DNA of 64,000 bases, taken from positions 101,800,595 through 101,864,594 of the forward strand of contig NC_090382.1 of NCBI RefSeq assembly GCF_036365525.1. The letters run 5' to 3'. The first letter of the stretch is position 1, and each line of letters begins with the position of its first letter. Positions 35,996 through 62,403 of this stretch are shown here, one piece after another. Below the pieces are notes generated by a model. It ran no database searches. It saw only the letters and a list, made by a program, of their open reading frames with translations, and was not told the origin of the DNA. Position numbers and translations under genes: made by a program. The DNA is from Heterodontus francisci (Eukaryota).

Positions 35996-37459
35996 CTTTC
36001 ATTTTTACTTCATGCTGCAAAGTGTACCCAAAATTATTACTCATCTTGAAGAAAAAAAATCAAAAAGGTTATGAAAGTTTAGGAGAGTACGGGTTTACAG
36101 ACACAAGGTTTAACTTTTTTTACCCTATTTTTGGTACATTTCCTACATGTTAGAATCTAGTGTGACAATGGACAGTAATTTTTTCCTTACATTTAAAAAT
36201 GGAGAAATCTGAGGATTATTTTGAGAAAAGAAATCCTTGGCTCTAGGGGCTAGCACCCTGAGAGAGTGGTAAGGTGCCCCTCCAATTCTTCGAGCCACCC
36301 TCTTGGGTGGATGCACATGAGCTGCAAATAGCACAGGCCTTTGAGACAGGGACATCGCTGGGCAATACTGACTATCAGAAATCCCGCCCCCTGTGCTTCC
36401 ATTATGTGTAAGAGCCTCCAAGATTTTCAATCCAGGTAACACATGGTAAGCTCTTTAAGGCTTGTTAATTAGCAAGAGTTTCACATCATATTCATGGGAT
36501 TATGATGCATCCAACCTCCATAATCCCATTTTCTGGGAGGAAATGAGACAATGAAGGATGGAAAAGTCATGGGCACTGTGGTTTTTCCGCATAATAACTT
36601 GGAGTTGAAGCCCTTCAGGGCTGCATGGCTCTGGGTAGTAGAGGGCATTCTAGGAGAAGTTTCATTTTTGGGATGCCTCTCCACAGTCACCATTGATGAA
36701 TTTGTTTGGCTGCAACCCCACTTGAGCATAAGTGTTTTGCAGTAGCTGACACCAGTTCTAATGCAATTGACACACAGCCAATTAGGCTTTCGTCGACTCC
36801 TGAGGGGATGGATTCCTCTGGGTCATTGGACAACTCGTGTGCCTTTGTCTGTAGATGTGTTGACTAATCAGCAAGGTGGTAGCTGTGGGGGTTACAATCT
36901 AGGGGCTGGATAGTATGTAAGATGCTGGCCCTCGACTTGAGCCTCTTTGTTGCAGGCTCCTTCTGAACAAGGGGATGACGAGTGCTACTGGGGCACAGAA
37001 GGAGTTTGCACTTCGCGGTCCCTGTCAGGCTTTGTCGAGTCTGTGAATCCTTCTAAACGCTACACCTACCCTTTAGCTCCCATCAGGAGCCAACAAAAGT
37101 GCTACATTGCATAATTGAATCATCATTGTTGGACATTACACGTCTGAGATCTTAATTGAGTGGGCAGCAAACTTATGTGAAACATTATTTATTTTTCATA
37201 AAGAAGTTGCTGTTTAACATAGATGTACAGAAGCTGTGAAAGGATTGTTGAAAGTTCATTGAGAACCACTTCTGTTGTAAGTTTTTTTTTTCAAACATGA
37301 ACATAACTCATGAATAATAAGTATTGCAATGATTGTGTTAAATCAGAGAAATTACATAGGAAGGAAGGTCCATTTCTGTTCTCAGATAAAAATATCAGTA
37401 CCAAAAATATTATTTTCCACATATCTAACTCCAAGCTCTTCCTGCATCTCCGGTTCAGA

Positions 37460-37531
37460 TTATTTCTGTTTTACTTGTGCAATTTGTGCATAGATGACAG
37501 ATGAATCATCTTCCTTTGAATGAGCCGGGTT
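37460..37531 (-). CDS. Gene A last coding exon (ITIM VIYAQI)
   Basis: Acceptor tttctctcttgtag, phase 0; NPAHSKEDDSSVIYAQIAQVKQK*; possible poly(A) signal AATAAA (minus strand) at 37188-37193. Confidence 0.85.
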   Translation of the reverse strand, partial: NPAHSKEDDSSVIYAQIAQVKQK

Positions 37532-37599
37532 CTACAAGAGAGAAATTAACCATTTATAATAATGTGAACTATTAATGCATCTCTTTACATCAAATACAT

Positions 37600-38375
37600 C
37601 AGATCATGCAGCATGATCTGGACAACATTCAGGCTTGGGCTAAAAAGTGGCAAGTAACATTTGGGCAACACAAGTGCTAGGCAATGACCATCACCAAAAA
37701 AGAGAATCTAACCAGGTCCCCTTATCTTTCAATGGCATTATCTGGACCAGTCATATTAATACTGTGGCTACAAGAGCAGGTCAGAAGTTGGGAATTCTGC
37801 AGTGAGTAACTCACCTGCTGAGTCCCAAAATCCTGTCGACCATCTACCAGGCACAAGTCAACAGTGTGCTGGAATACTCTCCACTTGCCTGGATGAGTAC
37901 AGCTTAAACAACACTCAAGAAGCTCAACAGAATCCAAGACAAAGCAGCCTGTTTGTTTGGCACCCCATCCACCACCTTAAACATTCATTCCCTCCACCTC
38001 TGGCGCACAGTGGCAGCAGTGTGTACTATCTAGAAGATGCACTGCAGCAACTCGCCAAGCCTCCTTCGACCACACCTTCCAAACCTGTGACCTCTATCAC
38101 CTAGAAGTACAAGGGCAACAGATGCATGGGAACACCACCACCTGCAAGTTTCCTCCAAGTCACACATCATCCTGACTTGGAACTATATTGCAGTTCCTTC
38201 ACGGTCACTGGGTCAAAATCCTGGAACTCCCTTCCTAACAGCACTGTGCGTGCATCTACACCACATGGACTGCAGCTGTTCAAGAGGAAGCTCACCACTA
38301 CCTTCTCAAGGGCAATTACAAATGGGCAATATATATGGGCCTTGCCAGTGATGCTCACAAGTCATGAACGAGTAA
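37600..38375 (+). mobile_element. CR1/L2-clade LINE 3' fragment
   Basis: Same family as 18060-20078. Confidence 0.75.
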
Positions 38376-38456
38376 AAAAAAACAACTTTACAAATTTGTT
38401 GCAGATATTAATATTGTATGGCGTGTGATTTCATCAGTTGGAATTGATGTACTTAC

Positions 38457-38500
38457 AGTATCTGAAGATTGTTTATTGCGTTGAATACCATGTCTATGCC
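38457..38500 (-). CDS. Gene A cytoplasmic exon 4
   Basis: attattacag / gtaagt boundaries; 44 nt, phase 1-0; GHRHGIQRNKQSSDT; supplies exactly the phase change needed to reach the last exon. Confidence 0.78.
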
Positions 38501-40802
38501 CTGTAATAATTGCAAATATTACAATTAAAAGATAATATTGATAGATCAGACTGACAAAAAGTGACATGTAAATGTCCTCAGCTTACTGCATTTCAAACAG
38601 AGAATGGATCGGCAAGACTTGGCAAGTCAGTGAACCAAGTTGTCCTCTGTAAGACTCAGATCCAAACGAAGCACTGCATTTACAGTGAGCCATAGGGCTG
38701 GTCATAAATGAACTAAGCTCCCTGTAATACTCTGAGAGTGTGAGACTGTCATTGTCACTACAGTGTCAGAAAGCAAAGAAATTATAAACAGCAAGAGGCC
38801 ATTTCATCCATTGCAGCTCGGCTGGGGCGAGTTGGTCATCTGCAGCTATCATTCTAACCCAATTTCCTGCCTTATCTCACTGACATTTTATCATATTTAT
38901 TTACTCTTTATCCTATATTACATGTTGGGCTTGACTCTCCTGGTCCTTCCAGGTGAAGCCGTGTCAAAGTGGAATCCGCCTATCCAGGCTTCAGAGTGTC
39001 TTAATACGTTTGGCCAGGCCATTAGCACGGTTTGAGTGAACGATTGTTGCAGGACTCTGGGAAACAAGCAGAGTATCAATCACATCACAGGGTTGAGAGG
39101 ACTGGCAACAATGGGAAGGGCCACAGGTCTTGAGGCTTTCTGGCTGTTGACCAGCAGTCAGAGGCTTAGCTCAGGATTCCATGATTGTTGAGAGATGACA
39201 GGACCCACTACTAGCTCACTCAGGTGCTTTTGGAAGTGGGTGCTCTTCAGATGAAAATACAGGAAAGTGAGGTTGGACCAAGCAGGAACTGCTCCTTCAG
39301 TCTTATTTTCATTGAAGCTTGGAAACAATCTTAAAGGAATGGAGGTCCTATGTCACAGATCACCATCCTTTTTTACCAAATGCTGCTCAAGCCATAGTCC
39401 CCAAAGGACCATAGGCATTTCTCCTCATTACAGAGAGACAGATGGCAATGTACAGGTAGAGGGTCACCACTCCTCAAGCATGGGGCATGGTGAGGAGGTA
39501 GGCCTCCATGAACTACCACAGCCAGTACAGGGATTTAACCCACACTGTTATTTTTTCTTTCTGCATCACGCTATAGCCATCTAGCAAACTAAGCTAACCA
39601 ACTTATTTTGGACTGCGAAAACCCGGCGAATACGTATTTCCTGGCTACTGTTGAAAAATTAGCTTTATTTATATCAATTCGAGAAGAATTTTCATAGTGT
39701 TTTTCACCTCCTCAGGTTCTCCCAAAGCAACTGAAACACATTGATCGTTTCGTCAACTGTTCCAGGGAATTAATGTCCATAAATGCAACATTCCCTCTGC
39801 AGCAAGCAGAGGTAAGCCTGAGCCAAGCTGGCAGTCTGAAGGCTGAAACATGTTTCCTTCGACATTACATGTGCAATATTTGATGTGATATAATTTAAGA
39901 ATGTCAGAAGTTTTCCTTTTATTGTGGTTCCATATTGCTAATAACTTCAACATTTAGTTCAAAAATTGTCACAATAAATGTTCATCTTTCACATCACATT
40001 TTTTCCAGAAAAGTTCCAATTGGAAAGATACGACCAATTCCATTGATAAAAATGCAATGTCACCAAGATTTATTGTCTGTGCAGGAGAATGCACTTGTCA
40101 TAAGGGCCCTAAATCATCCTACAATATTTTTTACATTTGTTCTTAGGATGTGGATGATCCTGGTTCAGTCACATTTATTACCATCTCTGGTTACCCTAAG
40201 AAGGCAATGGATATTCTTCTTGAAGCAGTTATACACTTCAGAGAACAGTTAACCACAAAGTGTGGATTAGAGTTCCAAGTAAGCCACAAGGTAGGTGTCT
40301 TCCCCTGGAGGGCATTAGTAAACCCAATTATCTTGAGTTCCCTGATGCTCACTTACAAATAAGATTTATTAAATTCAATTCCACAACTTACCATAGTAGG
40401 AGAGGAACTGATCACTTTCAGGCTGGCAGGTCAGTACCATAGTTACCACTACACTGTGCCTGGCTGTTGAGAAACTATGATATTTGTTGTTTCTCGTCTC
40501 AATGCAGCTCCTACAGGGAACGGAACTACAGCAGAATACTTTTTCGAATTCAACATTAAATTGCAATTTCACTCAGAGAGGGCAAAAGAAGAATATCTGT
40601 GGCAAATGGAAAAATGGCACACTGGTTCATCAGTGAGTGCTCTTCTGAGATTGGTGAGAGAACACTTTGATGGGGTAGAGAATAAAAGCTTTATGATTAG
40701 GTGCCTAAATGTAATGAGTTTTATTATTCAGCACTAATAATTGTCCTTGAAGAACAAACACAATGAAAAAAGGAAAATTATTGCAATATCAGATTTCATT
40801 AC

Positions 40803-40859
40803 CTTGTGCTTTTTCTTGAAAAATGACAGATCCATAATGAATATCTTCCCTTTCTGTGT
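40803..40859 (-). CDS. Gene A cytoplasmic exon 3 (ITIM IHYGSV)
   Basis: ttattctctgcag / G|gtaatg boundaries; 57 nt, phase 1-1; NTEREDIHYGSVIFQEKAQ. Confidence 0.85.
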
Positions 40860-40897
40860 CTGCAGAGAATAAGATAGAAATAAAGTATTTGCATCTA

Positions 40898-40904
<7 letters not shown>

Positions 40905-40932
<28 letters not shown>
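40905..40932. repeat. (TA)n microsatellite
   Basis: Read directly from the sequence. Confidence 0.95.
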
Positions 40933-40935
<3 letters not shown>

Positions 40936-41134
40936 TGCCTGAACATCTCCCAAAACAAGTAATGAATTACTTTTAATGTGGAAATACCATTATCAAGTAA
41001 ACATATACAGCATCAAGGTCCCAAAAGCAGTACATTAGATAACAACCAGTTAATCATTTGTGGTGGTAATGATTGAGGGAAGAATATTCATCAGGACGTC
41101 GTGCTCTCCTTCAACTGTATGATGATTATTTTTA

Positions 41135-43560
41135 TTTGTTCATAAGATGTGGGTGTCGCTGATAATGCCAGCAGTCAACCCCAATTCCGAATTGCCCTTG
41201 AGAGGGTGATGGTGAGGCGCCTTGTTGAACCGTTGCAATCCATTTGGTGTAGATACATCCACAGTGCTGTTAGGATTTGAGTTCCAGGCTTTTAACACAG
41301 CGAGAGTGAAGAAACTGTGATATATTTCCAAGTCAGGATGGAGTGTGACTTGGAGGGTGGTGTTCCCATGCACCTGCTGCCTTCTAGGTGATAGAGGTTG
41401 TAGGTTTGAAAGGTACTGTTGGAGAAGCCTTGGCAGTGCATCTTGTACATGGTACACACTGTAGCCATGGTGTGCATTAGTGGTGGAGGGAGTGAATGTT
41501 TAAGGTTGTAGTTGGAGTGCCAATCAAGTGGACTGCTTTGTCCTGGATCATGTTGAGCCTCCTGAGTGTTGTTGGAGCTGCACCCATCCAGGCAAGTGGC
41601 GAGTTTTCCAACACACTTGTGCCTTGTAGATAGTGGACAGGCTTTGTGGATTTAGGAGGTGAGTTACTCACCTCAGAATTCCCAACCTCTATAGTCACAG
41701 TATTTACATGGCTGACCAAGTTAATCTTCTGGTCAAAGATGATCCCCAGAATTTTGATGATGGGGGATTCAGTGATGGTAATGCCATTGAATGTCAAAGG
41801 GAAATGGTTAGACTCTCACTTGCTGGAGATTGTCAATTTCTGCCGGTTGTGTGGCACAAATGTTACGTTGCTTGTCAGCACAAGCCTGAATGTTGTCCAG
41901 ATCTCACTGCATGCAGGCACAGACTGCTTCATGATCTGTGACTGACAATGCGCACTGTGAACGAAGATCGTAATTCTGACATTATGATGGAGGGAAAGTC
42001 ATTGAAGCAGTTGAAGATGGTCAGGCCGAGGACACTGCCCTGGGGAATTCCTGAAGCAATGTCCTGTGGCTGAAATGATTGGCCTCCAACAAACACAACC
42101 ATCTTCCTTTATGCTAGGTATGACTCCAATCAGTGGAGAATATTCCCCCGATTCCCATTGACTTCAATTTTATGAGGGCTCCTGATGCCACCCCCAGTCT
42201 AATGCCACCTTGATATCAAGTGCCGTCACTCTCACCTCACCTCTGGAATTCAGCTCTTCTGTCCATGTTTGGATCAAGGCTGAAACAAGGTCTGGAACTA
42301 AATGGTCCTGGTAGATCCAAAAGTGAGCATTAGTGAGCAGGATATTGATGAGTAAGTGCAGCTTGATAGCACTGACGATGACACCTTCTATCACTTTGCT
42401 GATGATTGAGAGTAGACTGATGGGGTGGTAGCTGGCTGGATTCGATTTGTCCTCTTCTTTGTGGACAGGACCTACCTGGGCAATTTTCCACATTGTCAGG
42501 CAGATTCCCATGTTGTAGCTGTGCTGGAACATCTTGGCTAGGGGTGCACCTTGTACTGAAGCACTACAGCCGGGATGTTATTGGGGCCCATAACTTTGCT
42601 CTATCCAGTCTACTCAGCCATTTCTTGATATCACGTGGAGTGAATCGATTTGGCTGAAGACTGGCATCTGTGATGGTGGGGACCTCTGGAGAAGTCTGAG
42701 GTGGATCATCCACTTGCCACTTCTGACTGACGATGGTTGCAAATGCTTCAGCCTTGTCTTTTGCACTGACATGCTGGGCTCCGCTATTATTGAGGATGAG
42801 GATGTTCATGGAGCCTCCTCCTCTGGTTAATTGTTTAATTGTCCACTACCATTCATGATTAGATGTGGTAGGGCTGCAGAGGTTTGATCTGACATGTTGG
42901 TTGTGGGATTGCTTAGCTCTGTCTATAGTATACTGCTTCACTTTTCAACATGAACGTCGTCCTGTATTGTAGTTTAACCAGGTTTTCACCTCATTTTTAG
43001 GTATATCTGGTGCTGCTCCTGGCATTCTCTTTGCCACTCATCACTGGACCAGGGTTGATCCCCTGGCTTGATGGTAATGGTAGAGTGAGGGATATGCCAA
43101 GCCATGAGGTTGCAGAATGTGGTGAAATACAATTCTGCAACTGCTGATGGCCCACAACGCCTCATGGATGCCCAGTTTTGAGTTGTTACATCAGAACATC
43201 GGTTCTGAATCTATCCCATTTAGTGGCAGTGCCACACTACATGATGGAAGATGTCCTCTTTGTGAAGACAAGACTTTGTCTCCACAGGACTGTGCGGTGG
43301 TCACTTCTACCAATACTGTCATGGACAGATGCATCTGTGACAGATAGATTGGTGAGGATGAGGTGAAGTAGGTTTTTTCCCTCTTGTTGGTTCTCTCACC
43401 ATCTGCCACAGGCCCAGTCAAGCAGATAAGTCCTTCAGGACTCGGCCAATTGGGTCAGTTGTGGCCCTTCTGAGCCACTCGTTGTGACGAACATTGAGTA
43501 CATGGACAAGGAAACTTCCTGCTGATTACCACCTACTGCCCTTCCTCAACTGATGAATCA
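41135..43560 (-). mobile_element. CR1/L2-clade LINE, degraded
   Basis: YHPISLLSIISKVIE...ALDIK in ORF 42170-42532. Confidence 0.85.
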
Positions 43561-43581
43561 GTACTTCTCAAATTAATGCCA

Positions 43582-43662
43582 GCTGTGATGGCTGAATGGT
43601 TAAAGTGCTGGCTTTGAAATTCAATGGGGTTTCTCCATGCAGTTCAAGCCCTGCTCACAGTA
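43582..43662 (+). pseudogene. Degenerate tRNA-Ser (CGA-type) pseudogene
   Basis: gctgtgatggctgaatggttaaagtgctggctttgaaattcaatggggtttctccatgcagttcaagccctgctcacagta matches vertebrate tRNA-Ser(CGA) GCTGTGATGGCCGAGTGGTTAAGG...CCTGCTCACAGCG, with CpG-type decay. Confidence 0.75.
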
Positions 43663-44029
43663 GCTCTGGTTAATATGTAAATTTGGGAGCACTGCTTTTC
43701 TTGATCTAGATTAATGATCTAGACTTTGGTCTATCAGGTACATTCTCAAAATTTGTGGATGGCACGAAACTTGGAAGTATTATGAACTGTGAGGAGGATA
43801 GTGATAAGCTCCAAGAGGACTTAGACAGGCCAGCGGAATGGGCAGAAAATGGCAGATGAAATTTAATGCAGAGAAGTGTGAAGCGATTCATTTTGCTAGG
43901 AAGAACGAGGAGAGGCAATGTAAAACAAAGAGTACAATTCTAAAGAGGGTGCAGGAGCAGAGAGACCTTTTTTTTGTGTACAAATCATTGAAGGTGGTAG
44001 GGCAAGTTGACAACGTGGTTAATAAAGGT

Positions 44030-47000
44030 CATACGGTCATAAGAACTCGGAGCAGGAGTAGGCAATTCAGCCCCTCGAGCCTGCTCCGCCATTCAATACG
44101 ATCATGACTGATCCCATCTCGGCCTCAGCAACACTTTCCTGCCTGTTCTCCATAACGCTTCAACCCTTTAGTAATTAAAAATCTGTCTATCTCCTCCTTA
44201 AATTTACTCAATGTCCCGGCATCCACCGCACTCTGGGGTAGTGAATTCCACAGACTCACGACCCTTTTAGAGAAGTATTTTCTCCTCATCTCCATTTTAA
44301 ATCTGCTACTCCTTATCCTAAAACTATGACCTCTCATTCTAGATTGCCCCACAAGAGGAAACATCCTCTCTATATCTACTTTGTCAATCTTCTTAATCCT
44401 CTATCTACCTCAATTAGATCTCCTCTCAGTCTTCTAAACTCTGGAGAGTAAAGGCCTAAACTGCTCAATCTCTCTTCATAAGACAAACCCCTCAACTCTG
44501 GAATCAATCGAGTGAATCTCCTCTGAACTGCCTCCACTGCAACTACATCCCTCCTCAAGTAAGGGGACCAAAACTGTACGCAATACTGCAGGTGCAGTCT
44601 CACTAATGCCTTGTACAGTTGCAGCAACATTTCCCTACTTTTATATACTATTCCTTGAGCAATAAATGCCAAAATTCCATTTGTCTTCCTTATTACCTGC
44701 TGCACCTGCATACTAGCTTTCTGTGATTCATGCACGAGGACACCCAGATCCCTCTGCACTGAAGCATTCTGAAGTTTCTCTCCATTTAGATAATAATTTG
44801 CCTTTCTATTCTTCTCCACAAAGTGGATAACCTCACACTTATCCACGATATACTCCATCTCCATCAAAGAAGCTGACTCACTCCAAGCAGAAGGGCCGCC
44901 TGCGCATCAACACTCGCAGAATTTCTCATCCACAGCTGTTAGATAAGTTTCTAAATTCACTTGAAAAAGCCCTTCAAAACACTCCTACAGGGGATGCAGA
45001 GACCAAGTGGGCCAACATCAGAGACGCCATCTATGACTCAGCAGTGATCACCTATGGCAAACGTGTGAAGCAGAATGCAGTCTGGTTTCAATCTCAGTTT
45101 GAAGAGCTGGAACCCATTATAGCCGCTAAGCGCATTGCACTGCTGAACTACAAGAAAGCCCCCAGCGAGTTAACATCCGTAGAACTTAAAGCAGCCAGAA
45201 GCACTGCACAAAGAACAGCCAGGCGCTGCGCAAATGACTACTGGCAACACCTATGCAGTCATATTCAGCTGGCCTCTGACACCGGAAACATCAGAGGAAT
45301 GTATGATGGCATTAAGAGAGCTTTTGGGCCAACCATCAAGAAGATCACCCCCCTCAAATCTAAATCAGGGGACACAATCACTGATCAATGCAAGCAAATG
45401 GACCGCTGGGTGCAGCACTACCTAGAACTGTACTCCAGGGAAAATGTTGTCACTGAGACCGCCCTCAATGCAGCCCAGTCTCTGCCAGTCATGGATGAGC
45501 TGGACGTACAGCCAACAAAATCGGAACTCAGTGATGCCATTGATTCTCTAGCCAGCGGAAAAGCCCCTGGGAAGGACGGCATTATCCCTGAAATAATCAA
45601 GAGTGCCAAGCCTGCTATACTTTCAGCACTCTATGAACTGCTTTGCCTGTGCTGGGATGAGGGAGCAGTACCACAGGACATGCGCAATGCCAATATCATC
45701 AGCCTCCATAAGAACAAGGGTGACCGCGGTGACTGCAACAACTACCGTGGAATCTCCCTGCTCAGCATAGTGGGGAAAGTCTTCGCTCGAGTCGTTTTAA
45801 AGAGACTCCAGAAGCTGGCTGAGCATGTCTACCCTGAGGCACAGTGTGGATTTCGAGCAGAGAGATCGACCATTGACATGCTGTTCTCCCTTCGCCAGCT
45901 ACAATAGAAATGCAGTGAACAACAGATGCCCTTCTACGTTGCTTTCATTGATCTCCCCCAAAGCCTTTGACCTCATCAGCAGACGTGGTCTCTTCAGACT
46001 ACTATAAAAGATCGGATGTCCACCAAAGCTACTAAGTATCATCACCTCATTCCATGACAATATGAAAGGCACAATTCAGCATAGCGGTGCCTCATCAGAC
46101 CCCTTTCCTATCCTGAGTGGCGTGAAACAGGGCTGTGTTATCAAACCTACACTGTTTTGGATCTTCTTCTCCCTGCTGCTCTCACATGCGTTCAAGTCCT
46201 CAGAAGAAGAAATTTTCCTCCACGCAAGATCAGATGGCAGGTTTTACAAGCTTGCCCATCTAAGAGTGAAGACCAAGTACGGAAAGTCCTCATCAGGGAA
46301 CTCCTCTTTGCTGACGATGATGCTTTAACATCTCACACTGAAGAGTGTCTGCAGAGACTCATCAACAGGATTGTGGCTGCCTGCAACAAATTTGGCCTAA
46401 CCATCAGCCTCAAGAAAACAAACATCATGGGACAGGACGTCAGAAATGCTCCATCCATCAATATTGGTGACCACGCCTTGGAAGTGGTTCAAGAGTTCAC
46501 CTACCTCGGCTCAACTATCACCAGTAACCTGTCTCTCGATGCAGAAATCACCAAGTGCATGGGAAAGGCTTCCACTGCTATGTCCAGACTGGCCAAGAGA
46601 GTGTGGGAAAATGGCGCACTGACACGGAACACAAAAGTCCAAGTGTATCAAGCCTGTGTCCTCAGTACCTTGCTCTACGGCAGCGAGGCCTAGACAACGT
46701 ATGTCAGCCAAGAGCGACGTCTCAATTCATTCCATCTTTGCTGCCTCCGGATAATCCTTGGCATCAGGTGGCAGGACCGTATCTCCAACACAGAAGTCCT
46801 CGAGGCGGCCAACATCCCCAGCATATACACCCTACTGGGCCAGCGGCGCTTGAGATGGCTTGGCCATGTGAGCCGTATGGAAGATGGCAGGATCCCCAAG
46901 GACACATTGTACAGCGTGCTCGTCACTGGTATCAGACCCACTGGCCGTCCATGTCTCCGCTTTAAAGACGTCTGCAAACGCGACATGACGTCCTGTGACA

Positions 47001-48515
47001 TTGATCACAACTCGTGGGAGTCAGTTGCCAGCGATCGCCAGAGCTGGCGGGCAGCCATAAAGGTGGGGCTAAAGTGTGGCAAGTCAAAGAAACATAGCAG
47101 TTAGCAGGAAAAAAAGACAGAAGCGCAAGGGTAGTGCGAACTCTGCAACAGCCCCGACAACCAACTTTATCTTCAGCACCTGTGGAAGAGTCTATCACTC
47201 TCGAATTGCCATTTATAGCCACTCCAGGCGCTGCTTCACAAACCACTGACCACCTCCAGGCGCTTACCCATTGTCTCTTGAGACAAGGAGGCCAAAGAAA
47301 GTAAGAAAGACTCCATCTGCCAAATTTTGGCCCGTTCACCTAACCTACCCATATCCATTTGTAAATTTCTTATTTCTTTACTGCAAATTACTATCCCACC
47401 TATTTTAGTCTCATCTGCAAATTGGGCTATTGTACCTTCTACCCCTGCATCCAAGTCATTAATATATATTGTAAATAATTGGGGCCAAAGGACCGAACCC
47501 TGTGGCACCCCACGAGTTACATCTTGCCAACCAGAAAAAGGAACTATTTATCCTGACTCGCTTTTTTCTGTTGGTTAGCCAATCCTCTATCCATGCTAAT
47601 AAATTGCCCCAACCCCATGTGATCTTACCTTGTGCATTAACCTTTTGTGCGGCACCCTATCAAATGCCTTCTGGAAGTCCAGATATACTACATCTACAGG
47701 ATCCCCATTATCCACTTTGCTTGTTACAGCTTCGAAGAACTCTAGCAAATTAGTCAAACACGATTTACCCTTCATAAAACCATGCTGACACTGATGTATT
47801 GTGTTTTGACTTTCTAAATATCCCGTTATTACTTACTTAATAATGGATCCTAACAATTTCCCAATGACAGATGTTAAACTAACTGGTCTGTAGTTTCCTA
47901 CTTTCTGCCTCCCTCCCTTTTTGAACAAGGGTGTTATATTAGCATTTTTCCAATCCACTGGAACCTTTCCTGCAACCAGGGAATTTTGGAATATTATAAC
48001 CCATGGATCCACTATCTCCGCTGCCACTTCCTTTAAGACCCTAGGATGTAGGCCATCAGGCCCTGGGGATTTGTCTGCCTTCAATCCCAATAGATTGCTC
48101 AGTACTTGTTCCCTCGTGATGATGATTTTTCTAAGTTCCTCTCTTCCTATAATCTCTGCATTTCCTGTTACTATTGGGATGGTACTAGTGTCCTCCACCG
48201 TGAAAACTGAGGCAAAAAACTGATTTAGTGTCTCCGCCATTTCTGTGTTCCCCTCTAGTAACTCCCCAGTCTCATCCTCCAAAGGACCAACATTCACTTT
48301 AGCTACTCTCTTACCTTTTATATACTTATGGAAGCTTTTGCAATCCGTTCTTATATTTTGCACTAGTTTTCTTTCATAATTTACCTTTGCTCTTTTTATT
48401 ACTTTTTTAGTAACCCTTTGTTGATCTTTAAAAGATACCCAATCTTCCAGCCTGCCACTGGCCTTTGCAATATGGTATGCCTTAGTTTTTGTCTTTATGT
48501 TATCCTTAACTTTCT
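44030..48515 (-). mobile_element. CR1 LINE split by an RTE insertion
   Basis: ORFs 47833-48591, 47236-47508, 44376-44867 and 44125-44364 are collinear CR1 ORF2 pieces. Confidence 0.92.
44861..47309 (+). mobile_element. RTE-clade LINE (5' truncated) nested in the CR1
   Basis: NYRGISLLSIVGKVFAR, QCGFRAERSTID, LLFADD, RWLGHV; TSD actccatct at 44852-44860 and 47310-47318. Confidence 0.92.
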
Positions 48516-48539
48516 TCCTCTCGAGAATATATTTTAGTT

Positions 48540-49170
48540 GGGTATGTGGGTTCCTGGGCTTTATAAATAGGGGAATGGAGGACAAAAGCAAGGAATTTAT
48601 GATGAATCTTTATAAAACCCTGATTCGCCCTCAACTGGGAGTATTTGGTCCAATTCTGAGCACCATGATTTAGGAAGGATGTGAAGGCTTTAGAGAGGGT
48701 GCAGAAAAGATTGACAAGAATGGTTCCAGGGATGAGGAGCTTCAGTTATGTGGATCAGCTGGAGAAGCTGGGTTGTTTTCCTTTGAGAAGAGAAGGTTGA
48801 GGAGATTTGATAGAGGTTTAAAAATAATGAGGAGTCTGGATAGATTAGATGTGGAGAAACGATTCCTGTAGGCAGTAGGGTCGAGAACTAGAGGACACCA
48901 ATTGAAGACGATTGGCAAAAAAAGCAATGGCAACATGAGGAAAAACATTTTTACGTAGTGTCTTGTTCAGATCTGGAACGCACTGCCTGAAGGTGTGGTG
49001 GAGGATGATTCAGAAGAGAATTGGATAATTATCAAAAGCAAAAGACTTTGCTGGGCTACTGGAAAAAAGTGGGTGAGTGGGACTAGGTGACTTGCTCTTC
49101 CAGAGAGCTGGGATGGACATGATGGGCCAAATGGCCTCCTTCTGTGCTGTCACCATTCTATGATTCTATA
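48540..49170 (+). mobile_element. CR1 LINE 3' fragment
   Basis: Typical 3' ORF2 and tail ending attctatgattctat. Confidence 0.8.
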
Positions 49171-49863
49171 ACTTAGGGGAAGCACAGAGGCTAGCGACTG
49201 TACGGAAGGTACTGTGTGATGGTGGGGACCTCAGGAGAAGGCTGAGGTGGATCATCCACTTGGCACTTCTGGCTGAAGATGGTTGCAAATGCTTCAGCCT
49301 TGTCTCTTGCCCTGACATGCTTGGCTATCATTGACGATAGGGATGTTTATGGAGCTTCCTCCTCCTGTGAGTTGTTCTACTGTCCACTACCATTCATGAT
49401 TGGATGTGGCAGGGCTTTGTCCATGTTTGACCTGATGCCGTGAGTCTTCAGAGAGTCCAGAGTCAGTGTCGAGGACTCCCAGGACCATGTCCTCCCAACT
49501 GTTTACCATTGTGCTGCCACCTCTGTTGGATCTGTCCTGCTGATGGGGCACGATGTACTCAGGGATGGTATGGGATGAATCTGGAATGTTAACTCTCAGC
49601 TATGATTCTGTGAGTATGACTATGACAGGCTTTTGCTTGACTAGTCTGTGGGCCAGCTCTCCCAATTTTAGCACAAGTGCCCAGCTTCACAACTTTACTA
49701 AAAATTGTGAAAATATCTCAGAATTTATCATTGCATATCTGAAGAGCTTTTTCACCAAAGTATTAAACTAGAAACAAAATCTTAACTCAATGCAATCTCA
49801 CAGTTTCTATATAAACAATACCTACACTGAGATCGAGCAACATATTATGATTTATCTACTTAC

Positions 49864-49941
49864 TGTCTTCTTTTGCCTTTTGATTGACTTCAGCATAATC
49901 AGCAAAACTACTTGTCTCAGGCACCAGCGTCTCATTATCTT
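49864..49941 (-). CDS. Gene A cytoplasmic exon 2 (ADYAEV)
   Basis: ttttttccag / A|gtaagt boundaries; 78 nt, phase 1-1; EDNETLVPETSSFADYAEVNQKAKED. Confidence 0.85.
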
Positions 49942-50354
49942 CTGGAAAAAATATTTTTCTGATTCAGACATTAGCATGGTTTGTTTTTCAAAAAGCTATA
50001 TCAGGTATGGCTTAAAAAAATTGCTCCGTTGCTAATGAGATAGATTTGCGTGATTAGGGTCACAAGTGGTTTTCGAAATAGTAGAGTATTGTGATGTGTG
50101 CTGGCAGCATCTAATGTTTGTAGGTAATATCTCAGATAATGTAGGATCGATTTTTGAGAGGGGAAGTGTTAAGGACTCAAAATGTAGCTATTAATCAGAC
50201 TGTTAATTGAGATACATGACAAACTATAAGTGAGATTTAAACTGGTGCAGGCTATCATTGTGTGACGTGGTTTCTTAATGTCTATGGTTTGAACGTACTC
50301 TTCAAATGAAGATTGGAAAATGTTACAAATATAACAAATAATGAAAATCACAAA

Positions 50355-50565
50355 TAAAAACAAGAAATGCTGGAACCTCTCAGCAGGTCTGGCAGCATCT
50401 GTGAAAAGAGAAGCAGAGTTAATGTTTCGTTCCGAAGAAGGTCACTGACCCGAAACGTTAACTCTGCTTCTCTTTTCACAGATGCTGCCAGACCTGCTGA
50501 GTGGTTCCAGCATTTCTTGTTTTTATTTCAGATTTCCAGCATCCGCAGTATTTTGCTTTTATTTT
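50355..50565. repeat. Palindromic Penelope-end-like element
   Basis: aaacaagaaatgctggaacc..cagcaggtctggcagcatctgtg is inverted as cacagatgctgccagacctgctg..ggttccagcatttcttgttt; twin at 51451-51663, relative at 19443-19660. Confidence 0.8.
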
Positions 50566-51031
50566 AATGAAAATCACATCCTGACATACAATAGTATTGA
50601 ACTACATTGTAGAAAGTTCCAGATCACTTCGCAGCTTGAGTTCCTATTGCTCTCAATGAATGAGTTTCAACAGGTTTCCAGTTGGGTAACTGACTAGTCT
50701 CATCAACAGTTGTCTCACTCCGGGGTGTTTAGGAATTGTGAATTTGAGTGGCATATGTTCCACAGCATCCTGGGAACTAAGCTTTAGAAAGTTCCTGAAT
50801 AGCCAGACTCTGGATTGGAGACCTAACAGTAAGAATGGGAACTGATTATGAAGAATAAGAAAATGAACCTGCAATCAACAGGATATTTGAATGTGACAGA
50901 ATAGAGGAATAACATTTCTGTGTTTGAGTGTCATTTTATGTAAAACTGAAAATTACAATTACGCAATTGCTATGAACAACTGCGCAGAGCACATTAAAAT
51001 CCCTGTTATGTTATTAGTGTTTAAATATTAC

Positions 51032-51124
51032 CTTGAATTTGCTGGATTTCATTAATATTTGAATAAAGCTGAGGTGCCTCTTCTGTATTTTCCCCTCGTT
51101 GCAGAGGTTTCTGTCTTTGATTCC
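51032..51124 (-). CDS. Gene A cytoplasmic exon 1 (YSNI)
   Basis: AG/GT boundaries (an in-frame alternative AG lies 6 nt upstream); 93 nt, phase 1-1; GNQRQKPLQRGENTEEAPQLYSNINEIQQIQ. Confidence 0.82.
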
Positions 51125-51450
51125 CTGAACCTATTCATACAGAAATCGCCCATTAACATGCGTTCAGCTTTCCTTACAAGGAATGCAGTGTAGAATGATG
51201 CCTGGACTTCAAGGGTTAAATTACAAGGAGTGATCACACAGACTAGGGTTGTATTCCTTGGAATTTAGAAGGTTAAGGGGTGATTTGATAATTTGAGTGT
51301 AGTTTTAAAGATTTTAATGGGAACTGATTGGATAGAGAGAAACTATTCGCTGTGGTTGGGGAGTCTCAGACTCGGGGCATAGCCTAAAATTTAGAGTTTA
51401 AAATTTAGACTAAGCTTTTGGCCGCCAGTCCAAATACCTCCATATAATAT

Positions 51451-51663
51451 AAAAACAAGAAATGCTGGAACCACTCAGCAGGTCTGGCAGCATCTGTGGA
51501 AAGAGAAGCAGAGTTAACGTTTCGGGTCAGTGATCCTTCTTCGGTCACTGACCCGAAACGTTAACTCTGCTTCTCTTTCCACAGATGCTGCCAGACCTGC
51601 TGAGTGGTTCCAGATTTACTTGTTTTTATTTCAGATTTCCAGCATCCGCAGTATTTTGCTTTT
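51451..51663. repeat. Palindromic Penelope-end-like element
   Basis: Near-identical to 50355-50565. Confidence 0.8.
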
Positions 51664-52034
51664 ACAAATATCTGCATATGTGGCTCAGTGTCAAATTCAG
51701 TTTAATAACACCCCTGTAAAGCATCTTCGGATGTTTTTCCACATTAAAGGCACTCTATAAATCTAGGTTGTTGATTTTGTTATACAGCTGTGATCAGTTG
51801 CATCGTCTCGTACTGAACTCCCATCATTCTAGCAGTTCAGGAACTGTTGCCTTCCAAGAATATTTGACACATAGAAAAACCAACACATCTGTTTATGCAA
51901 TCCGAGTGAATTACATTGTTTAAAATTAAACAAGGATATCATTATCATTCCTGGATTTGGGAATCATGTGCCACATTCACATTTTATTACATGTATCAGA
52001 CTTGAAATTGAACGCAGCAATTTACATATCTTAC

Positions 52035-52142
52035 CTGCAACCTTGCACTTTCTTAGACTCAGTACCAGTGCCAGGATAATGATGAGGAGAAGAGCCAGAC
52101 TTCCAAAAATAACAACATTGGTATGTTTGAAAGTGGAACGAC
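52035..52142 (-). CDS. Gene A transmembrane exon
   Basis: ttattcttctgatag / G|gtaaga boundaries; 108 nt, phase 1-1; SRSTFKHTN-VVIFGSLALLLIIILALVLSL-RKCKVA, an uncharged TM segment with a basic stop-transfer. Confidence 0.92.
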
Positions 52143-59030: not shown

Positions 59031-60187
59031 GTTTCCACTTCCAGGATTTCCTGCCAGAAGTGATATTGGATGAGTATGGGTCATGTCCAAATGACTGGGA
59101 TTGACAGAGTGACATTAAGGGCTGAATTTTCACTTTGGGGGTGGGAAAAAAGATCCAAGCCCATTTCCAGGTCCTGAAGCCATCCCCGGGGGGATTGCTG
59201 AACTTTGACCTGGGCGCCTCCTTCATTGGCATGGAAACAGGTATCCTCTTCAATTAAGGGAAGCAAGCACCCTCTCGAAGCTGCAGGATCAACCAGTGGG
59301 CTTCCAGATTCAGAGCAGCACCTGGCTACAGTAATAGGTGGGTAACTGAGAGGGTGCTTCAACAAGAAGCCACTTTAAAAAGAAATTTAAACCAAAAATA
59401 CAGAAAACAGCCAGGCCACCGCTATCTGGAGGGGAACCCCCCTACAGGCTGGACCTCCACTCAGGCAGACCAGCAGTGCCTATAGGCCTGCCTGCAGTGC
59501 CAGTACACAGCATGAAACTGGATGCCTCCCTCCAAACAGTTAAACTGCACTACCCACACCCCCACCCTACCACCCAACTCCCCCGTTGCATCAGAAACTG
59601 GAAGCTGATTGGAAAATCACAGCTCACCTCCAGTATATACCCTCAACAAGGCTCTTAATGAGCTGAATTGCTTGTCCCCTTCATAGGGGCAGCCTTGCCA
59701 GGGCCCAAACCCGCGTTGACCAAAATGCCGATGCTGGGAATGGGGTCAGGAAACTGGCATGCTGGGAGGCCTCTTAATTATCCAACCCCATTCGCTTACA
59801 TTCTCAAACTCAGTGGAGCATGAAAATTCAACGCCTATGTGTCACATTTTCCACCATTACTCACTAGCACAACACGAGATGCAAGGAAAACTGCAATGTG
59901 ACCAGCATCTAGTCTTATTACAGTGGGCAAGGGGGGAATTTAGCATTTCAAAGATTCCTTACGGGAGTATAATGGACCTAAAAGACTTTTTTTTGCATTT
60001 ATTCATTTTCAATCCTCTCCGTAGCTTCGAGCTGTTTCGTTTGACTTTTTGATGTTTATATATGCAGACCTATCCTGTGAACTCTTAATAATGTGGAGTG
60101 CAACAGAATAAGAAGTTATCATAATTAAAGAGTATTAAGTGACCAGAATTGTCTTTGAAAATGACAAGCAAAATCTGAGAGACTTAC

Positions 60188-60457
60188 TGTTAAACTTCAG
60201 ATAATATGGAATTAAAACCTTGGGTGTGTTTTGATGAAGTAAAACACATGTCCAGTTCTCTCTGTCTCTATCGGTTTTCTGAATAATCAGCTGCAAAACA
60301 TCCTCTTCCTGTTTTTGTTCCTTCAATGTTTTCTCTGCAACAGTTTTGCCATCACTACTGATCCAAACAAGTCTCATTGATTCAGTGACATCAGAGACAG
60401 AGCAGGTCAGGGTAACAGTGTCTCCCTCAGTCACTGCATCAGGTGGTTCAGTTGTGA
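60188..60457 (-). CDS. Gene A Ig exon D8 (D4-type, WxC)
   Basis: 270 nt, phase 1-1, AG/GT boundaries; VTTEPPDAVTEGDTVTLTC...ENWTCVLLH...YYLKFN. Confidence 0.93.
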
Positions 60458-60535
60458 CTGTGGAAACAAGAAAATCATTTAGATTTTAAACAATAACATG
60501 ATCATTTAAAACCATGGGAACATTCTGTCTCCTAC

Positions 60536-60874
60536 CTTTAACTGTGATTAGTTTGATGGTCACAAAATTATATGATCCCAGAGAACATGTGTAAATTCCT
60601 GAATCTTCAAACAATACAGGGACAATCTGCACATTGAAGTTGTTGCCATTAAAGTTTGTCTCGGTGGGCACCAGTCGACTCCCAAAGTAGGTCCTGTTTA
60701 TATTGATAGGCTCAGATCTGTAAGTAGAAGCTATTTCTTCTTTTTGATTCTGAAAATAACGTGATGACCAGGTCCATTTAGTTTCAGTGTAATCAGATTG
60801 AACTTCACAACTTAGGTAGAGTTCACTGTGATCCGTGACTGACCGATAAAGTGTGTATATTATGTTGTGTAACT
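60536..60874 (-). CDS. Gene A Ig exon D7 (D3-type V-set)
   Basis: ctattgcag / G|gtagga boundaries; 339 nt, phase 1-1; ELHNIIYTLYRSVTDHSELYLSCEVQSDYTETKWTW...FEDSGIYTCSLG...KLITVK. Confidence 0.93.
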
Positions 60875-62130
60875 CTGCAATAGACAGACAGGAAACAAGA
60901 TGTTAGATTTTTATAGTTCCTGAGATACAGATGTTGTAAATTTCCACAGGACCAAACAGCGTCCTCCTGGTATGTCAGCTGGGAGTGCAGCATTAGGACA
61001 GGGAAATCGGCTGGGACCTGGATACACTGGCTGCTGGCCCAGGCTGATAGTTCTTTAAATGTCAGGTTGCAAGTCCATCTGCCTTAAATATGGCTCAGTC
61101 AAAGTGATATTTCTCCATGGACAGTAGATTTGTTAAACTGTCTCAGCAATTAATTATCAACAAATGCCTCATTCCCATTGTATTGGTACATCTGGTCCCA
61201 TTGTGAATAGGAGGTCAAATAGAGACAGAATCATTGATGGCCTGAATGGTCTCCTTCTATGCTATTATGACTCGATGACTCTATGACATAGGCAGGTCCA
61301 TCAAAGAGTGCAATGTCAGTCTAGCTTGATAGAGAAAGCAGCAAGGGGAAGCTTTGACTAATTTCTGAACTCCAGCAGGTCGGAGGTTCATTCGGAGTTA
61401 ATTTGTTTAGGTTAATTAGTTGACCCACTGGTTTGGAACAGTGAGGCATGTTCATTATTTTGAACTTATGCACAAAGACAGGTAATACTGATTAAACTAA
61501 GTGAATCCGATCATAACTGTTATTCTGTATGTTCCCTTGCTGTGAAATAAAGCACTTAAACTGACTTTGTCTCACCAAGGATTTTTTAGGCTGTCTTCAA
61601 AAAATACTAAAGATGCATGTGCGATAGACACAAATATCCAGTTTAGATCACAGGGGAATCTTATTCTTACACCCCAGGCTGTGCCATCACATAATCAGTC
61701 ATTGGGCAGTATGAGATTAACCCTGAATGTAAGATGCTCAGACCATTTTAGTGAGTGACCAGCACCACTGTACCCAAGAGAATGTTTCAGGAATGACCCT
61801 AATCTTTTAACATCAGTGTTGGGTGCCTTTAATTTGTTTGTATTTCTCTATTCCAATGTCGACTGGAAAGGCATTTCCTTTATTCAATTGATGGATTTTA
61901 TTCTTTTTGATTCACAAACATGAATTGAAATGAATCCATTGAATTCACCTGGTTGGTTACATCAGTTCTTAATGTCCCCATTTTATATTTACACCCATGT
62001 TCCAGGGTAAAAACAAGGACCACATTCTGCAGTAAATCCCACAGTGGTTTCTGTGCTCACTGTACTTTGTGTGTAACAGTTTTATATTAGTTATTATTTA
62101 ATACCTACTGCAAGGTAGCTCTGGACTTAC

Positions 62131-62403
62131 CCAGATCCACATCAACATTTGTGTTTCCACTGAGAACAATGGAGTCATTTTCATGCACTTCCCATGTATA
62201 TAAATTCTGATTCTCTGCTCCAACTTGTCTGACTATCAGATAGACTGTGTTATTCAGATGGATCTCATCAATATTGTTCCTCCTGTTCTGCTGAGATGAG
62301 TCTCTTGGTTTCCAGTGAAGACTGACTGTATCTGAGAGTCTGGAGATGGTACAGCTGAGGGTGATGTCACTGCCTATTACAGGCCTCTGTGAATCTGTCT
62401 CAA
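62131..62403 (-). CDS. Gene A Ig exon D6 (D2-type, F-strand Cys replaced by Trp)
   Basis: 273 nt, phase 1-1; VETDSQRPVIGSDITLSC...NLYTWEV...VDVDL. Confidence 0.93.

What the first reader, a model, noticed from the sequence alone, without database searches (positions are those of the whole stretch)
37460..52142. Hidden 120-aa cytoplasmic tail with two ITIMs, an ITIM-like motif and a Grb2-type YxN; neither CD4 nor LAG-3
Seen: five small exons missing from the ORF track splice in frame after the TM exon. They give RKCKVAGNQRQKPLQRGENTEEAPQLYSNINEIQQIQEDNETLVPETSSFADYAEVNQKAKEDNTEREDIHYGSVIFQEKAQGHRHGIQRNKQSSDTNPAHSKEDDSSVIYAQIAQVKQK*. Known: IHYGSV and VIYAQI fit the ITIM consensus (I/V/L/S)xYxx(L/V/I) that recruits SHP-1/2, and YxN is the Grb2 SH2 motif. 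CD4 needs a CxC Lck clasp and LAG-3 has FxxL and acidic EP motifs; none of these is present. The TM segment has no charged residue. Inference: a classical phosphatase-recruiting inhibitory receptor on a CD4-like ectodomain.
Basis: partly seen in the sequence, partly recalled or inferred. Interest (0 to 1): 0.78.

Follow-up and report, generated by a model that had tools for sequence, protein, structure and literature searches.

The report
Shark inhibitory receptor tail exons
The small exons are real and transcribed: they form the tail, carrying two conserved "off-switch" tyrosine motifs, of a horn shark surface receptor built like a doubled CD4, a gene already in the public annotation but unnamed and unstudied.

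Summary
Confirmed. On the minus strand, a 108-nt TM exon (52142-52035) is followed by five GT-AG exons in compatible phases.

RNA-like contigs of four runs from one sample show the c4/c5 and c3/c4 splices. They run on from c3 into the end of c2.

The window is Heterodontus francisci. A RefSeq protein (P0174, "uncharacterized protein isoform X3", 965 aa) matches the window exactly from D2' to the stop. That isoform skips c1, the YxN exon, and I did not test c1 use by RNA.

Both ITIMs occur in 61 of 61 distinct homologous tails. No tail has a CD4 Cx(C/H) motif, and one of 61 has a LAG-3-type motif.

The ectodomain of the full protein is two tandem V-C2-V-C2 units. A predicted model of a four-domain relative matches four-domain CD4 best (Z 15.4-17.6) and also LAG-3.

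The family is large in sharks, rays and chimaeras. It has mutually exclusive ITIM-tail and Lys-in-TM forms, so it looks like a paired-receptor family. No paper found in my searches describes it.

The scan had already noted the neighbouring paralogue (s1-872338). Phosphatase binding is inferred, not shown.

The parts
62132..62404 (-). D2' exon (C2-type Ig domain of the membrane-proximal unit). Its F strand reads YTWEV, so the usual second Cys is missing.
   Evidence: Exact match to P0174 aa 553-643. Pfam Ig_3/Ig_2/I-set weak hits.
60537..60875 (-). D3' exon (V-type Ig domain).
   Evidence: Exact match to P0174 aa 644-756. V-set hit.
60186..60458 (-). D4' exon (C2-type Ig domain with the WxC motif, NWTC).
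   Evidence: Exact match to P0174 aa 757-847. Pfam ig 1.6e-07. This exon was the query.
52035..52142 (-). Stalk/transmembrane exon (108 nt, phase 1-1). The TM is uncharged and is followed by juxtamembrane RKCKVA.
   Evidence: Exact match to P0174 aa 848-882. Homologues' TM segments hit here.
51032..51124 (-). Tail exon c1 (93 nt, phase 1-1 cassette). It holds the YxN motif (LYSNI).
   Evidence: AG/GT sites and frame. Hit by the tails of P0001, P0004, P0009, P0015 and P0019. Absent from P0174. No RNA test here.
49864..49941 (-). Tail exon c2 (78 nt, phase 1-1 cassette). It holds the ITIM-like FADYAEV.
   Evidence: Exact match in P0174. Its 3' end is seen as the loose end at 40859 in X1 and X2.
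40803..40859 (-). Tail exon c3 (57 nt, phase 1-1 cassette). It holds ITIM 1 (IHYGSV, Phe at +5).
   Evidence: Joint 38500|40803 in X1-X4. Exact match in P0174.
38457..38500 (-). Tail exon c4 (44 nt, phase 1 to 0). A spacer with no tyrosine.
   Evidence: Joints on both sides. Exact match in P0174.
37460..37531 (-). Coding part of the last exon c5. It holds ITIM 2 (VIYAQI) and the TAA stop.
   Evidence: Joint 37531|38457 in X1, X3 and X4. Exact match to P0174 aa 943-965.
37100..37459 (-). 3' untranslated region, at least to the edge of the stretch laid. AATAAA lies at 37193-37188. The true end was not determined.
   Evidence: Contigs of X1-X4 cover 37100/37209-37531. Sequence.

Best explanation
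The region holds the 3' part of a horn shark (Heterodontus francisci) gene for a type I membrane receptor. Its full form is signal peptide, two tandem V-C2-V-C2 units (eight Ig domains), an uncharged TM helix, and a modular tail. The tail is built from small cassette exons, each carrying one tyrosine motif.

Inferred mechanism:
- Ligand engagement next to an activating receptor lets a Src-family kinase phosphorylate the two ITIM tyrosines, which lie 39 residues apart.
- The pair then docks the tandem SH2 domains of SHP-1, SHP-2 or SHP-2L and dampens signalling.
- Skipping or including the phase-1 cassettes c1 (YxN, Grb2-type), c2 and c3 would tune which motifs are present.

The gene is one member of a large, unnamed chondrichthyan family. 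Its members carry either this ITIM tail or a TM lysine with a short tail. That is a paired inhibitory/activating family on a CD4/LAG-3-like scaffold.

Shown: the exons, the splices, transcription, motif conservation, the fold resemblance and the two tail classes.

Inferred: phosphorylation, phosphatase and Grb2 binding, the inhibitory outcome, the adaptor for the lysine forms, the ligand and the cell type.
For: - Splice sites and phases.
- RNA joints c2-c3-c4-c5.
- Exact identity to RefSeq P0174 aa 553-965.
- P0174 has two ectodomain halves that are 61.6% identical over 406 aa.
- Homologues' tails hit each of the five exons.
- ITIM 1 and ITIM 2 are in 61 of 61 distinct tails, YxN in 45 of 61, C.[CH] in 0 of 61, and [FY]..L[DE] in 1 of 61. 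One ITIM 2, VIYVQI, was missed by my narrow pattern and counted by eye.
- Of 140 family proteins, 57 have the two-ITIM tail, 22 have a TM lysine, none has both, and 61 have neither.
- Paralogues show cassettes duplicated or skipped: two c1 in P0213, two c3 in P0154, two c2 in P0196, no c1 in P0174 and P0211.
[quoted passage not shown] Phe at pY+5 and Ala at +1 with Ile at +3 are favoured by the SHP-2 SH2 domains (PMC12151841, passages). ITIM 1 has Phe at +5. ITIM 2 has Ala at +1 and Ile at +3.
- Fold: the AF2 model of P0153 has pLDDT 80.4 and long strands 132-147 and 336-350 running from V into C2.
- Foldseek: ranks 1-2 are LAG-3 and ranks 4, 5, 9, 10 and 11 are CD4.
- VIA-align: ranks 1-4 are four-domain CD4 (Z 17.6-15.4, 311-327 residues aligned). 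LAG-3 D3-D4 gives Z 13.4 at rmsd 3.5.
- PDB sequence search with P0156: the top four hits are LAG-3 (E 1e-4 to 3.5e-3).
Against: - There is no biochemical evidence of any kind.
- The cell type is unknown because the runs are coded.
- All RNA evidence is from one sample, as contigs, on runs whose RNA status is only guessed by their record.
- c1 use is unproven in this gene.
- The tail set for the conservation count was chosen by similarity to a tail, which favours conserved motifs.
- Sequence similarity to CD4/LAG-3 is weak. With a family profile, titin, CEA and NCAM scored above LAG-3. With the D4' exon alone, CD276 and IgE came before LAG-3.
- The fold model is of a relative (P0153), not of this protein.
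- An ITIM pair can also serve other SH2 proteins.
Confidence: 0.8

Rival explanations
1. It is a member of the CEACAM family. Such members have been reported from cartilaginous fish. Like CEACAM1 it would have an N-terminal V-like domain without a disulfide, C2 domains, and an ITIM/ITSM-type tail.
For: - NCBI names some relatives 'CEACAM5-like' or 'CEACAM1-like'.
- D1 of the family has no cysteine.
- The family profile hits CEA at 5.7e-14 and CEACAM1 at about 1e-9 in the PDB.
- PMC5112662 states that CEACAMs exist in cartilaginous fishes (passages).
Against: - The D1 exon alone finds no CEACAM N domain. Its only PDB hit is an unrelated enzyme at E 1.9.
- No CEACAM chain is among the 50 rows shown by Foldseek or by VIA-align, where CD4 and LAG-3 lead.
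- The domain order is V-C2-V-C2 repeated, not N-(A-B)n.
- D4 carries WxC.
Confidence: 0.07
2. The tail is mainly an activating or adaptor-type scaffold, as in teleost G6F-like or mammalian G6F. The tyrosines would recruit Grb2 and kinases rather than phosphatases, for example on thrombocytes.
For: - The nearest named clusters in the ESM Atlas are 'g6f-like' (0.96, 196 of 256 features) for the shark relative P0156, and likewise for a salmon relative.
- G6fL has four Ig-like domains and a conserved YxN (PMC3528668, passages).
- c1 carries YxN.
Against: - There is no ITAM. Tyrosine spacings are 19 and 39 in P0174, while G6fL's ITAM tyrosines lie 12 residues apart (Y515, Y527).
- The two most conserved motifs are canonical ITIMs.
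- YxN is the least conserved motif (45 of 61) and is skipped in P0174.
- The family has separate lysine-TM forms for activation.
Confidence: 0.1
3. It is the shark orthologue of LAG-3 or CD4 itself, with a diverged tail.
For: - LAG-3 is the best PDB sequence match of P0156.
- CD4 and LAG-3 lead the fold searches.
- LAG-3 has an ITIM-like motif that is a true ITIM in some teleosts (PMC10768021).
Against: - This is a many-copy tandem family. Two genes lie in this window, and each species has dozens of proteins.
- It has eight Ig domains.
- It has no Cx(C/H) and no (F/Y)xxL(D/E).
- D2 lacks WxC.
Confidence: 0.02

Closest known systems
LAG-3 (CD223)
   Same: - It is an inhibitory receptor on a V-C2-V-C2 ectodomain.
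- It is the best solved-structure sequence match of the relative P0156.
- LAG-3 D3-D4 superposes on the model's D3-D4 (Z 13.4, rmsd 3.5, 22% identity).
- D4 carries WxC.
   Different: - The LAG-3 tail motif (F/Y)xxL(D/E) is absent.
- Here there are two classical ITIMs plus YxN.
- There are eight Ig domains instead of four.
- This is a multigene family with lysine-TM partners.
- D2 has YxC or YTWEV, not WxC.
CD4
   Same: - Four-domain CD4 is the best structural match of the modelled relative (Z 17.6-15.4).
- CD4 D1D2 fits both the D1-D2 and the D3-D4 halves (Z about 13, rmsd 3.2-3.5).
- A continuous strand links V to C2 in the model. I recall this as a CD4 hallmark.
   Different: - There is no Cx(C/H) LCK motif.
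- No CD4-named Pfam family is among the matches.
- D1 has no detectable sequence similarity to CD4 D1.
- The tail is inhibitory in type.
Teleost G6F-like (G6fL) and mammalian G6F
   Same: - G6fL has four Ig-like domains, a TM and a tail with a conserved Grb2-type YxN (PMC3528668).
- It is the nearest named cluster by language-model features.
   Different: - G6fL signals through an ITAM. This tail has ITIMs and no ITAM.
- I could obtain no G6fL sequence from the tools, so there is no alignment-based test.
- The teleost relatives that I did find by sequence are all unnamed.
Classical two-motif inhibitory receptors (PD-1, PECAM-1, SIRP-alpha, LILRB/KIR)
   Same: - Two tyrosine motifs at a spacing suited to tandem SH2 phosphatases.
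- The first motif resembles the PD-1 ITIM pattern xYGxxxF. The second resembles its xYAxI motif (PMC12151841).
- There are paired activating relatives with a charged TM residue, as in KIR/LILR (recalled).
   Different: - The ectodomains are unrelated.
- The 39-residue spacing is at the long end (recalled values).
- The tail is encoded by five small exons that are duplicated or skipped among paralogues.

Membership tests
ITIM-bearing inhibitory Ig-superfamily receptors (functional class) | At least one cytoplasmic (I/V/L/S)xYxx(I/V/L) motif | tested here: met
   IHYGSV in c3 and VIYAQI in c5. Both are present in 61 of 61 distinct homologous tails.
ITIM-bearing inhibitory Ig-superfamily receptors (functional class) | TM segment without a charged residue | tested here: met
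   The TM is VVIFGSLALLLIIILALVLSL. None of the 57 two-ITIM proteins carries the TM-lysine motif.
ITIM-bearing inhibitory Ig-superfamily receptors (functional class) | Phosphotyrosine-dependent binding of SHP-1/SHP-2 or SHIP, with an inhibitory effect | not testable with these tools
   This needs biochemistry. The only support is that shark SHP genes and their pY pockets are conserved (PMC12151841).
CD4/LAG-3 family (criteria from PMC10768021, passages) | V-C2-V-C2 ectodomain | tested here: met
   Pfam finds a V-set in D3 and Ig/C2-like domains in D2 and D4. The model of P0153 matches four-domain CD4 over residues 32-434. In this gene the unit is present twice.
CD4/LAG-3 family (criteria from PMC10768021, passages) | WxC motif in strand F of both D2 and D4 | tested here: not met
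   D4' has NWTC. D2' has YTWEV, and the D2 of the paralogue has YVCEV. The motif is therefore met in D4 only.
CD4/LAG-3 family (criteria from PMC10768021, passages) | Location in the conserved LAG-3/CD4 genomic block | not testable with these tools
CD4 | Cx(C/H) LCK-binding motif in the tail | tested here: not met
   The tail has a single Cys (RKCK). C.[CH] is found in 0 of 61 tails.
LAG-3 | (F/Y)xxL(D/E) motif in the tail | tested here: not met
   It is absent from this tail (one search prints the tail). It is found in 1 of 61 tails.
G6F-like (G6fL) | Cytoplasmic ITAM together with YxN | tested here: not met
   YxN is present in c1, but no Y..[LI] x6-12 Y..[LIV] occurs. Tyrosine spacings are 19 and 39.
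G6F-like (G6fL) | Sequence homology to G6fL | tested here: inconclusive
   The only evidence is language-model nearest clusters named g6f-like. Three database searches returned no protein named G6f-like.
CEACAM | CEACAM-type N domain | tested here: not met
   The D1 exon has no CEACAM hit in the PDB. No CEACAM is in the 50 rows shown by either fold search.

The most novel reading that the evidence does not exclude
This family is an ancient third branch of the CD4/LAG-3/G6F group. It would have been kept from chimaeras and sharks to ray-finned fishes and the coelacanth, and expanded in cartilaginous fish into polymorphic paired inhibitory/activating receptors. With their CD4-like V-C2 rods they would read MHC or MHC-like ligands. 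That would make them the fish counterpart of KIR/LILR, and a window on how CD4 and LAG-3 arose.
Probability: 0.15. Interest if true: 0.8.

Novelty: new member of a known kind. Interest (0 to 1): 0.45.

Why it matters
Sharks are the oldest living lineage with adaptive immunity of the human type, yet their innate-like paired receptor families are barely described.

A large family combines three things: a CD4/LAG-3-like scaffold, a classical double-ITIM tail, and lysine-TM partners. That offers testable candidates for shark NK- or myeloid-type checkpoint receptors. It also bears on the origin of CD4, LAG-3 and G6F.

The exon-per-motif tail, with cassettes skipped or duplicated among paralogues, is a neat case of tuning signalling by splicing.

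For this one locus the news is modest. The gene model is already public, and the mechanism is the standard ITIM one.

Tried and rejected
**Searches that gave nothing specific**
- Pfam gave only generic Ig families for the exons and for five relatives.
- The family profile against the PDB was dominated by many-domain Ig proteins and did not discriminate.
- The D4' exon alone ranked CD276 and IgE before LAG-3.
- The D1 exon alone found nothing.

**Attempts to get a G6F-like sequence for an alignment test failed**
- The chondrichthyan profile gave 126 hits among 8000 candidates.
- The teleost/sturgeon/coelacanth profile gave 86 hits.
- A salmon relative gave 51 hits.
- None of these hits was named G6f-like.
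- An ITAM scan of the held proteins found a lamprey protein, not G6fL.

**Literature**
- 'G6F-like' found 6 papers.
- 'G6F' + 'shark' found 5 papers.
- 'obscurin-like' + 'nurse shark' found 0 papers.
- 'cartilaginous fish/ITIM/paired receptors/immunoglobulin superfamily' found 107 papers with 3 of the 4 terms, of which 15 were listed.
- 'CD4/LAG-3/shark/cytoplasmic tail' found 28 papers, of which 15 were listed.
- None of the listed papers describes this family. I read only listings and the passages named in the report.
- Ohashi 2010 is not held. I know it from citations and recall.
- Supplements were not opened. Supplementary Files 5, 6 and 10 of PMC10768021 and File 3A of PMC12151841 could bear on the family's placement and on the SH2 claims.

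**Considered and rejected**
- Pseudogene or unexpressed: rejected on the RNA joints.
- A charged-TM exon in this window: none was found.
- An allele as the explanation of the Tyr-to-Ser reads: see Noticed in passing.

**The joined step was left out**
- The joined spliced peptide was never sent to a search or a fold.
- Exons were searched one at a time by window reference.
- Natural database proteins served for full-length work.

Full report
**What is in the sequence**

The gene lies on the minus strand. Reading the flanks gives these exons:
- a 108-nt stalk/TM exon, 52142-52035
- c1, 51124-51032 (93 nt)
- c2, 49941-49864 (78 nt)
- c3, 40859-40803 (57 nt)
- c4, 38500-38457 (44 nt)
- c5, 37531-37463, followed by TAA

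Every exon has AG before it and GT after it. The TM exon, c1, c2 and c3 are phase 1 to 1, so they are cassettes that can be skipped without a frame shift. c4 goes from phase 1 to 0, and c5 starts in phase 0. The introns are full of LINE-type reverse-transcriptase debris. That is why an ORF list hides these 14-31-codon exons.

Upstream on the same strand lie three Ig-domain exons. A second gene of the same kind fills 23.3 kb down to the window's start.

**Is it spliced and expressed?**

The look-up of sequencing runs gave four runs of one sample and study that hold the stretch. Their record only guesses that they are RNA.

I laid them on 37100-41000. The contigs show the joint 37531|38457 in X1, X3 and X4. 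In X2 the same joint appears as loose ends on both sides. The joint 38500|40803 is seen in all four runs, and both joints have CT..AC ends, which is GT..AG on the minus strand.

At 40859 the contigs of X1 and X2 continue into 30 letters that are the reverse complement of the end of c2. I made that comparison by eye. Exon bins are tens of times deeper than intron bins.

So the c2-c3-c4-c5 splices exist in transcripts. This is one sample and contigs only. It says nothing of level, cell type or rare forms.

**Identity of the gene**

The D4' exon, searched alone against 1.84 billion representatives, gave 345 proteins at E up to 0.001 and 12 at up to 1e-30. The best are 'uncharacterized' proteins of sharks and rays.

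A profile search then returned P0174, a Heterodontus francisci 'uncharacterized protein isoform X3' of 965 aa. Its residues 553-965 match the window exactly and in order: D2', D3', D4', TM, c2, c3, c4, c5. The window is therefore horn shark, and four of the five 'hidden' exons are in RefSeq.

P0174 joins the TM exon straight to c2. The exact c1 peptide is in none of the proteins I held. c1 is supported by its intact frame and splice sites, and by 22-24 of 30 identical residues with c1-type exons of annotated relatives. My one reads call did not cover it. The YxN motif is thus optional at best.

The second gene in the window is P0173 (1033 aa). It is the paralogue that the scan noted before (s1-872338).

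**The tail and how it should work**

IHYGSV and VIYAQI fit the ITIM consensus. FADYAEV has Ala at -2. LYSNI is YxN. In P0174 the tyrosines lie 19 and 39 residues apart, so there is no ITAM.

I picked homologous tails with phmmer, using the tail of P0156 as query. That found 66 of the 357 proteins held, giving 61 distinct tails. Motif counts in those 61 tails:

| Motif | Tails with it |
|---|---|
| ITIM 1 | 61 |
| ITIM 2 | 61 (one, VIYVQI, fell outside my narrow pattern and was counted by eye) |
| YxN | 45 |
| C.[CH] | 0 |
| [FY]..L[DE] | 1 |

The set was chosen by tail similarity, so the count is partly circular.

Paralogues duplicate or drop single cassettes. There are two c1 in P0213, two c3 in P0154, two c2 in P0196, and no c1 in P0174 and P0211.

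Passages of PMC12151841 say three things. [quoted passage not shown] Phe at pY+5 helps both SH2 domains of SHP-2. The C-SH2 domain favours Ala at +1 and Ile at +3. ITIM 1 has Phe at +5, and ITIM 2 has Ala at +1 and Ile at +3.

From this, and from general knowledge of tandem-SH2 phosphatases (recalled), I infer a standard sequence. A Src-family kinase phosphorylates the two tyrosines, an SHP docks on them, and nearby activating signals are damped. None of this is shown.

**The ectodomain**

Pfam sees only generic Ig families. P0174 has two halves that are 61.6% identical over 406 aa. That means two V-C2-V-C2 units.

- D1 has no cysteine and no sequence match in the PDB.
- D4 has WxC.
- D2 has YxC, or YTWEV in the membrane-proximal unit.

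By sequence, the four-domain relative P0156 finds LAG-3 as its four best PDB matches, but only weakly (E 1e-4 to 3.5e-3).

I built an AlphaFold2 model of the four-domain relative P0153 with 36 aligned family members. It has pLDDT 80.4 and pTM 0.72, and long strands run from each V into the next C2 domain.

Foldseek ranks LAG-3 first and second, and CD4 at ranks 4, 5, 9, 10 and 11. Their TM-scores of 0.34-0.45 (by target length) compare with 0.27 or less for the other rows shown.

VIA-align puts four-domain CD4 at ranks 1-4 (Z 17.6, 17.4, 16.6 and 15.4, with 311-327 residues aligned). The next row is JAML at 14.1. CD4 D1D2 fits both halves, and LAG-3 D3-D4 fits D3-D4 (Z about 13, rmsd 3.2-3.7).

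'CD4-like ectodomain' therefore holds at the level of fold and architecture. This rests on a model of a relative.

**Family**

Of the 140 chondrichthyan family proteins I held, 57 have the two-ITIM tail. A further 22 have a lysine in the TM with a short tail. None has both, and 61 have neither by my patterns, many of them fragments. One lysine form, P0011, is from horn shark on the same 122-Mb contig.

More distant collinear relatives, all unnamed, occur in several groups:
- chimaera
- sturgeon
- coelacanth
- cyprinids, characins, catfishes, salmonids, eels and pike

The salmonid ones have four Ig domains with YxN plus ITIM-like motifs.

The ESM Atlas puts clusters named 'g6f-like' nearest to both the shark and the salmon protein. 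G6fL is a four-Ig thrombocyte collagen receptor with YxN and an ITAM (PMC3528668). I could get no G6fL sequence, so that link stays a lead.

**Comparison and novelty**

It is neither CD4 nor LAG-3. The defining tail motifs are absent, WxC is missing from D2, it is a many-copy family, and sharks have their own CD4 and LAG-3 (PMC10768021).

It works like LAG-3 or PD-1 in kind, as an inhibitory Ig receptor. It looks like KIR/LILR in family organisation.

The searches named under Tried and rejected found no paper on this family. The gene model itself is public. I rate it a new member of a known kind, of moderate interest.

**What was left out or unavailable**

The joined step was left out.

Noticed in passing
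window 37491 (within c5): In run X1 only, an 82-nt contig (depth 426 of 1283) reads G for T. On the coding strand that turns the ITIM 2 tyrosine codon TAT into TCT, which is Ser. The reads may come from that paralogue rather than from an allele.
   Followed up: partly
window 23323-991, minus strand: A second family gene (RefSeq P0173, 1033 aa) lies here. It has a leader near 23.3 kb, D1 at 21.3 kb, D2 at 17.4 kb, D3-D4 at 7.2-6.5 kb, then D1' at 3.1 kb and D2' at 1.3 kb, and runs off the window. Its D2' is 96% identical in protein to that of the studied gene. The N-terminal 64 residues of the RefSeq model map to 30914-30631 and may be a spurious first exon.
   Followed up: partly
window 62132-62404 and 991-1263: The membrane-proximal D2' domains read LYTWEV where the D2 of the first unit has Y-x-C. 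The F-strand cysteine is replaced by Trp while the B-strand Cys stays. The same holds in the catshark, manta and electric-ray relatives.
   Followed up: no
proteins P0097 and P0141 (not in the window): Two hits of the D4' exon are a lamprey protein (Lethenteron, P0097) and a protein NCBI names 'basement membrane-specific heparan sulfate proteoglycan core protein-like' (P0141; its organism is cut off in the listing). Both end in an ITAM-like YQAL(x10)YDNL. This may bear on the 'lamprey CD4-like' debate mentioned in PMC10768021.
   Followed up: no
protein P0193 (nurse shark, GenBank AGQ17915.1): One family member was deposited by hand as 'obscurin-like protein'. Its tail after the TM reads as an unspliced run-on. 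I found no paper for it.
   Followed up: partly
window 37624-38409: The c5-c4 intron holds a repeat that is very deeply covered in all four runs (word depth up to 272,000) and has many odd joints. It is most likely an expressed transposon family. The copy at 37742-38267 resembles 19220-19985.
   Followed up: no
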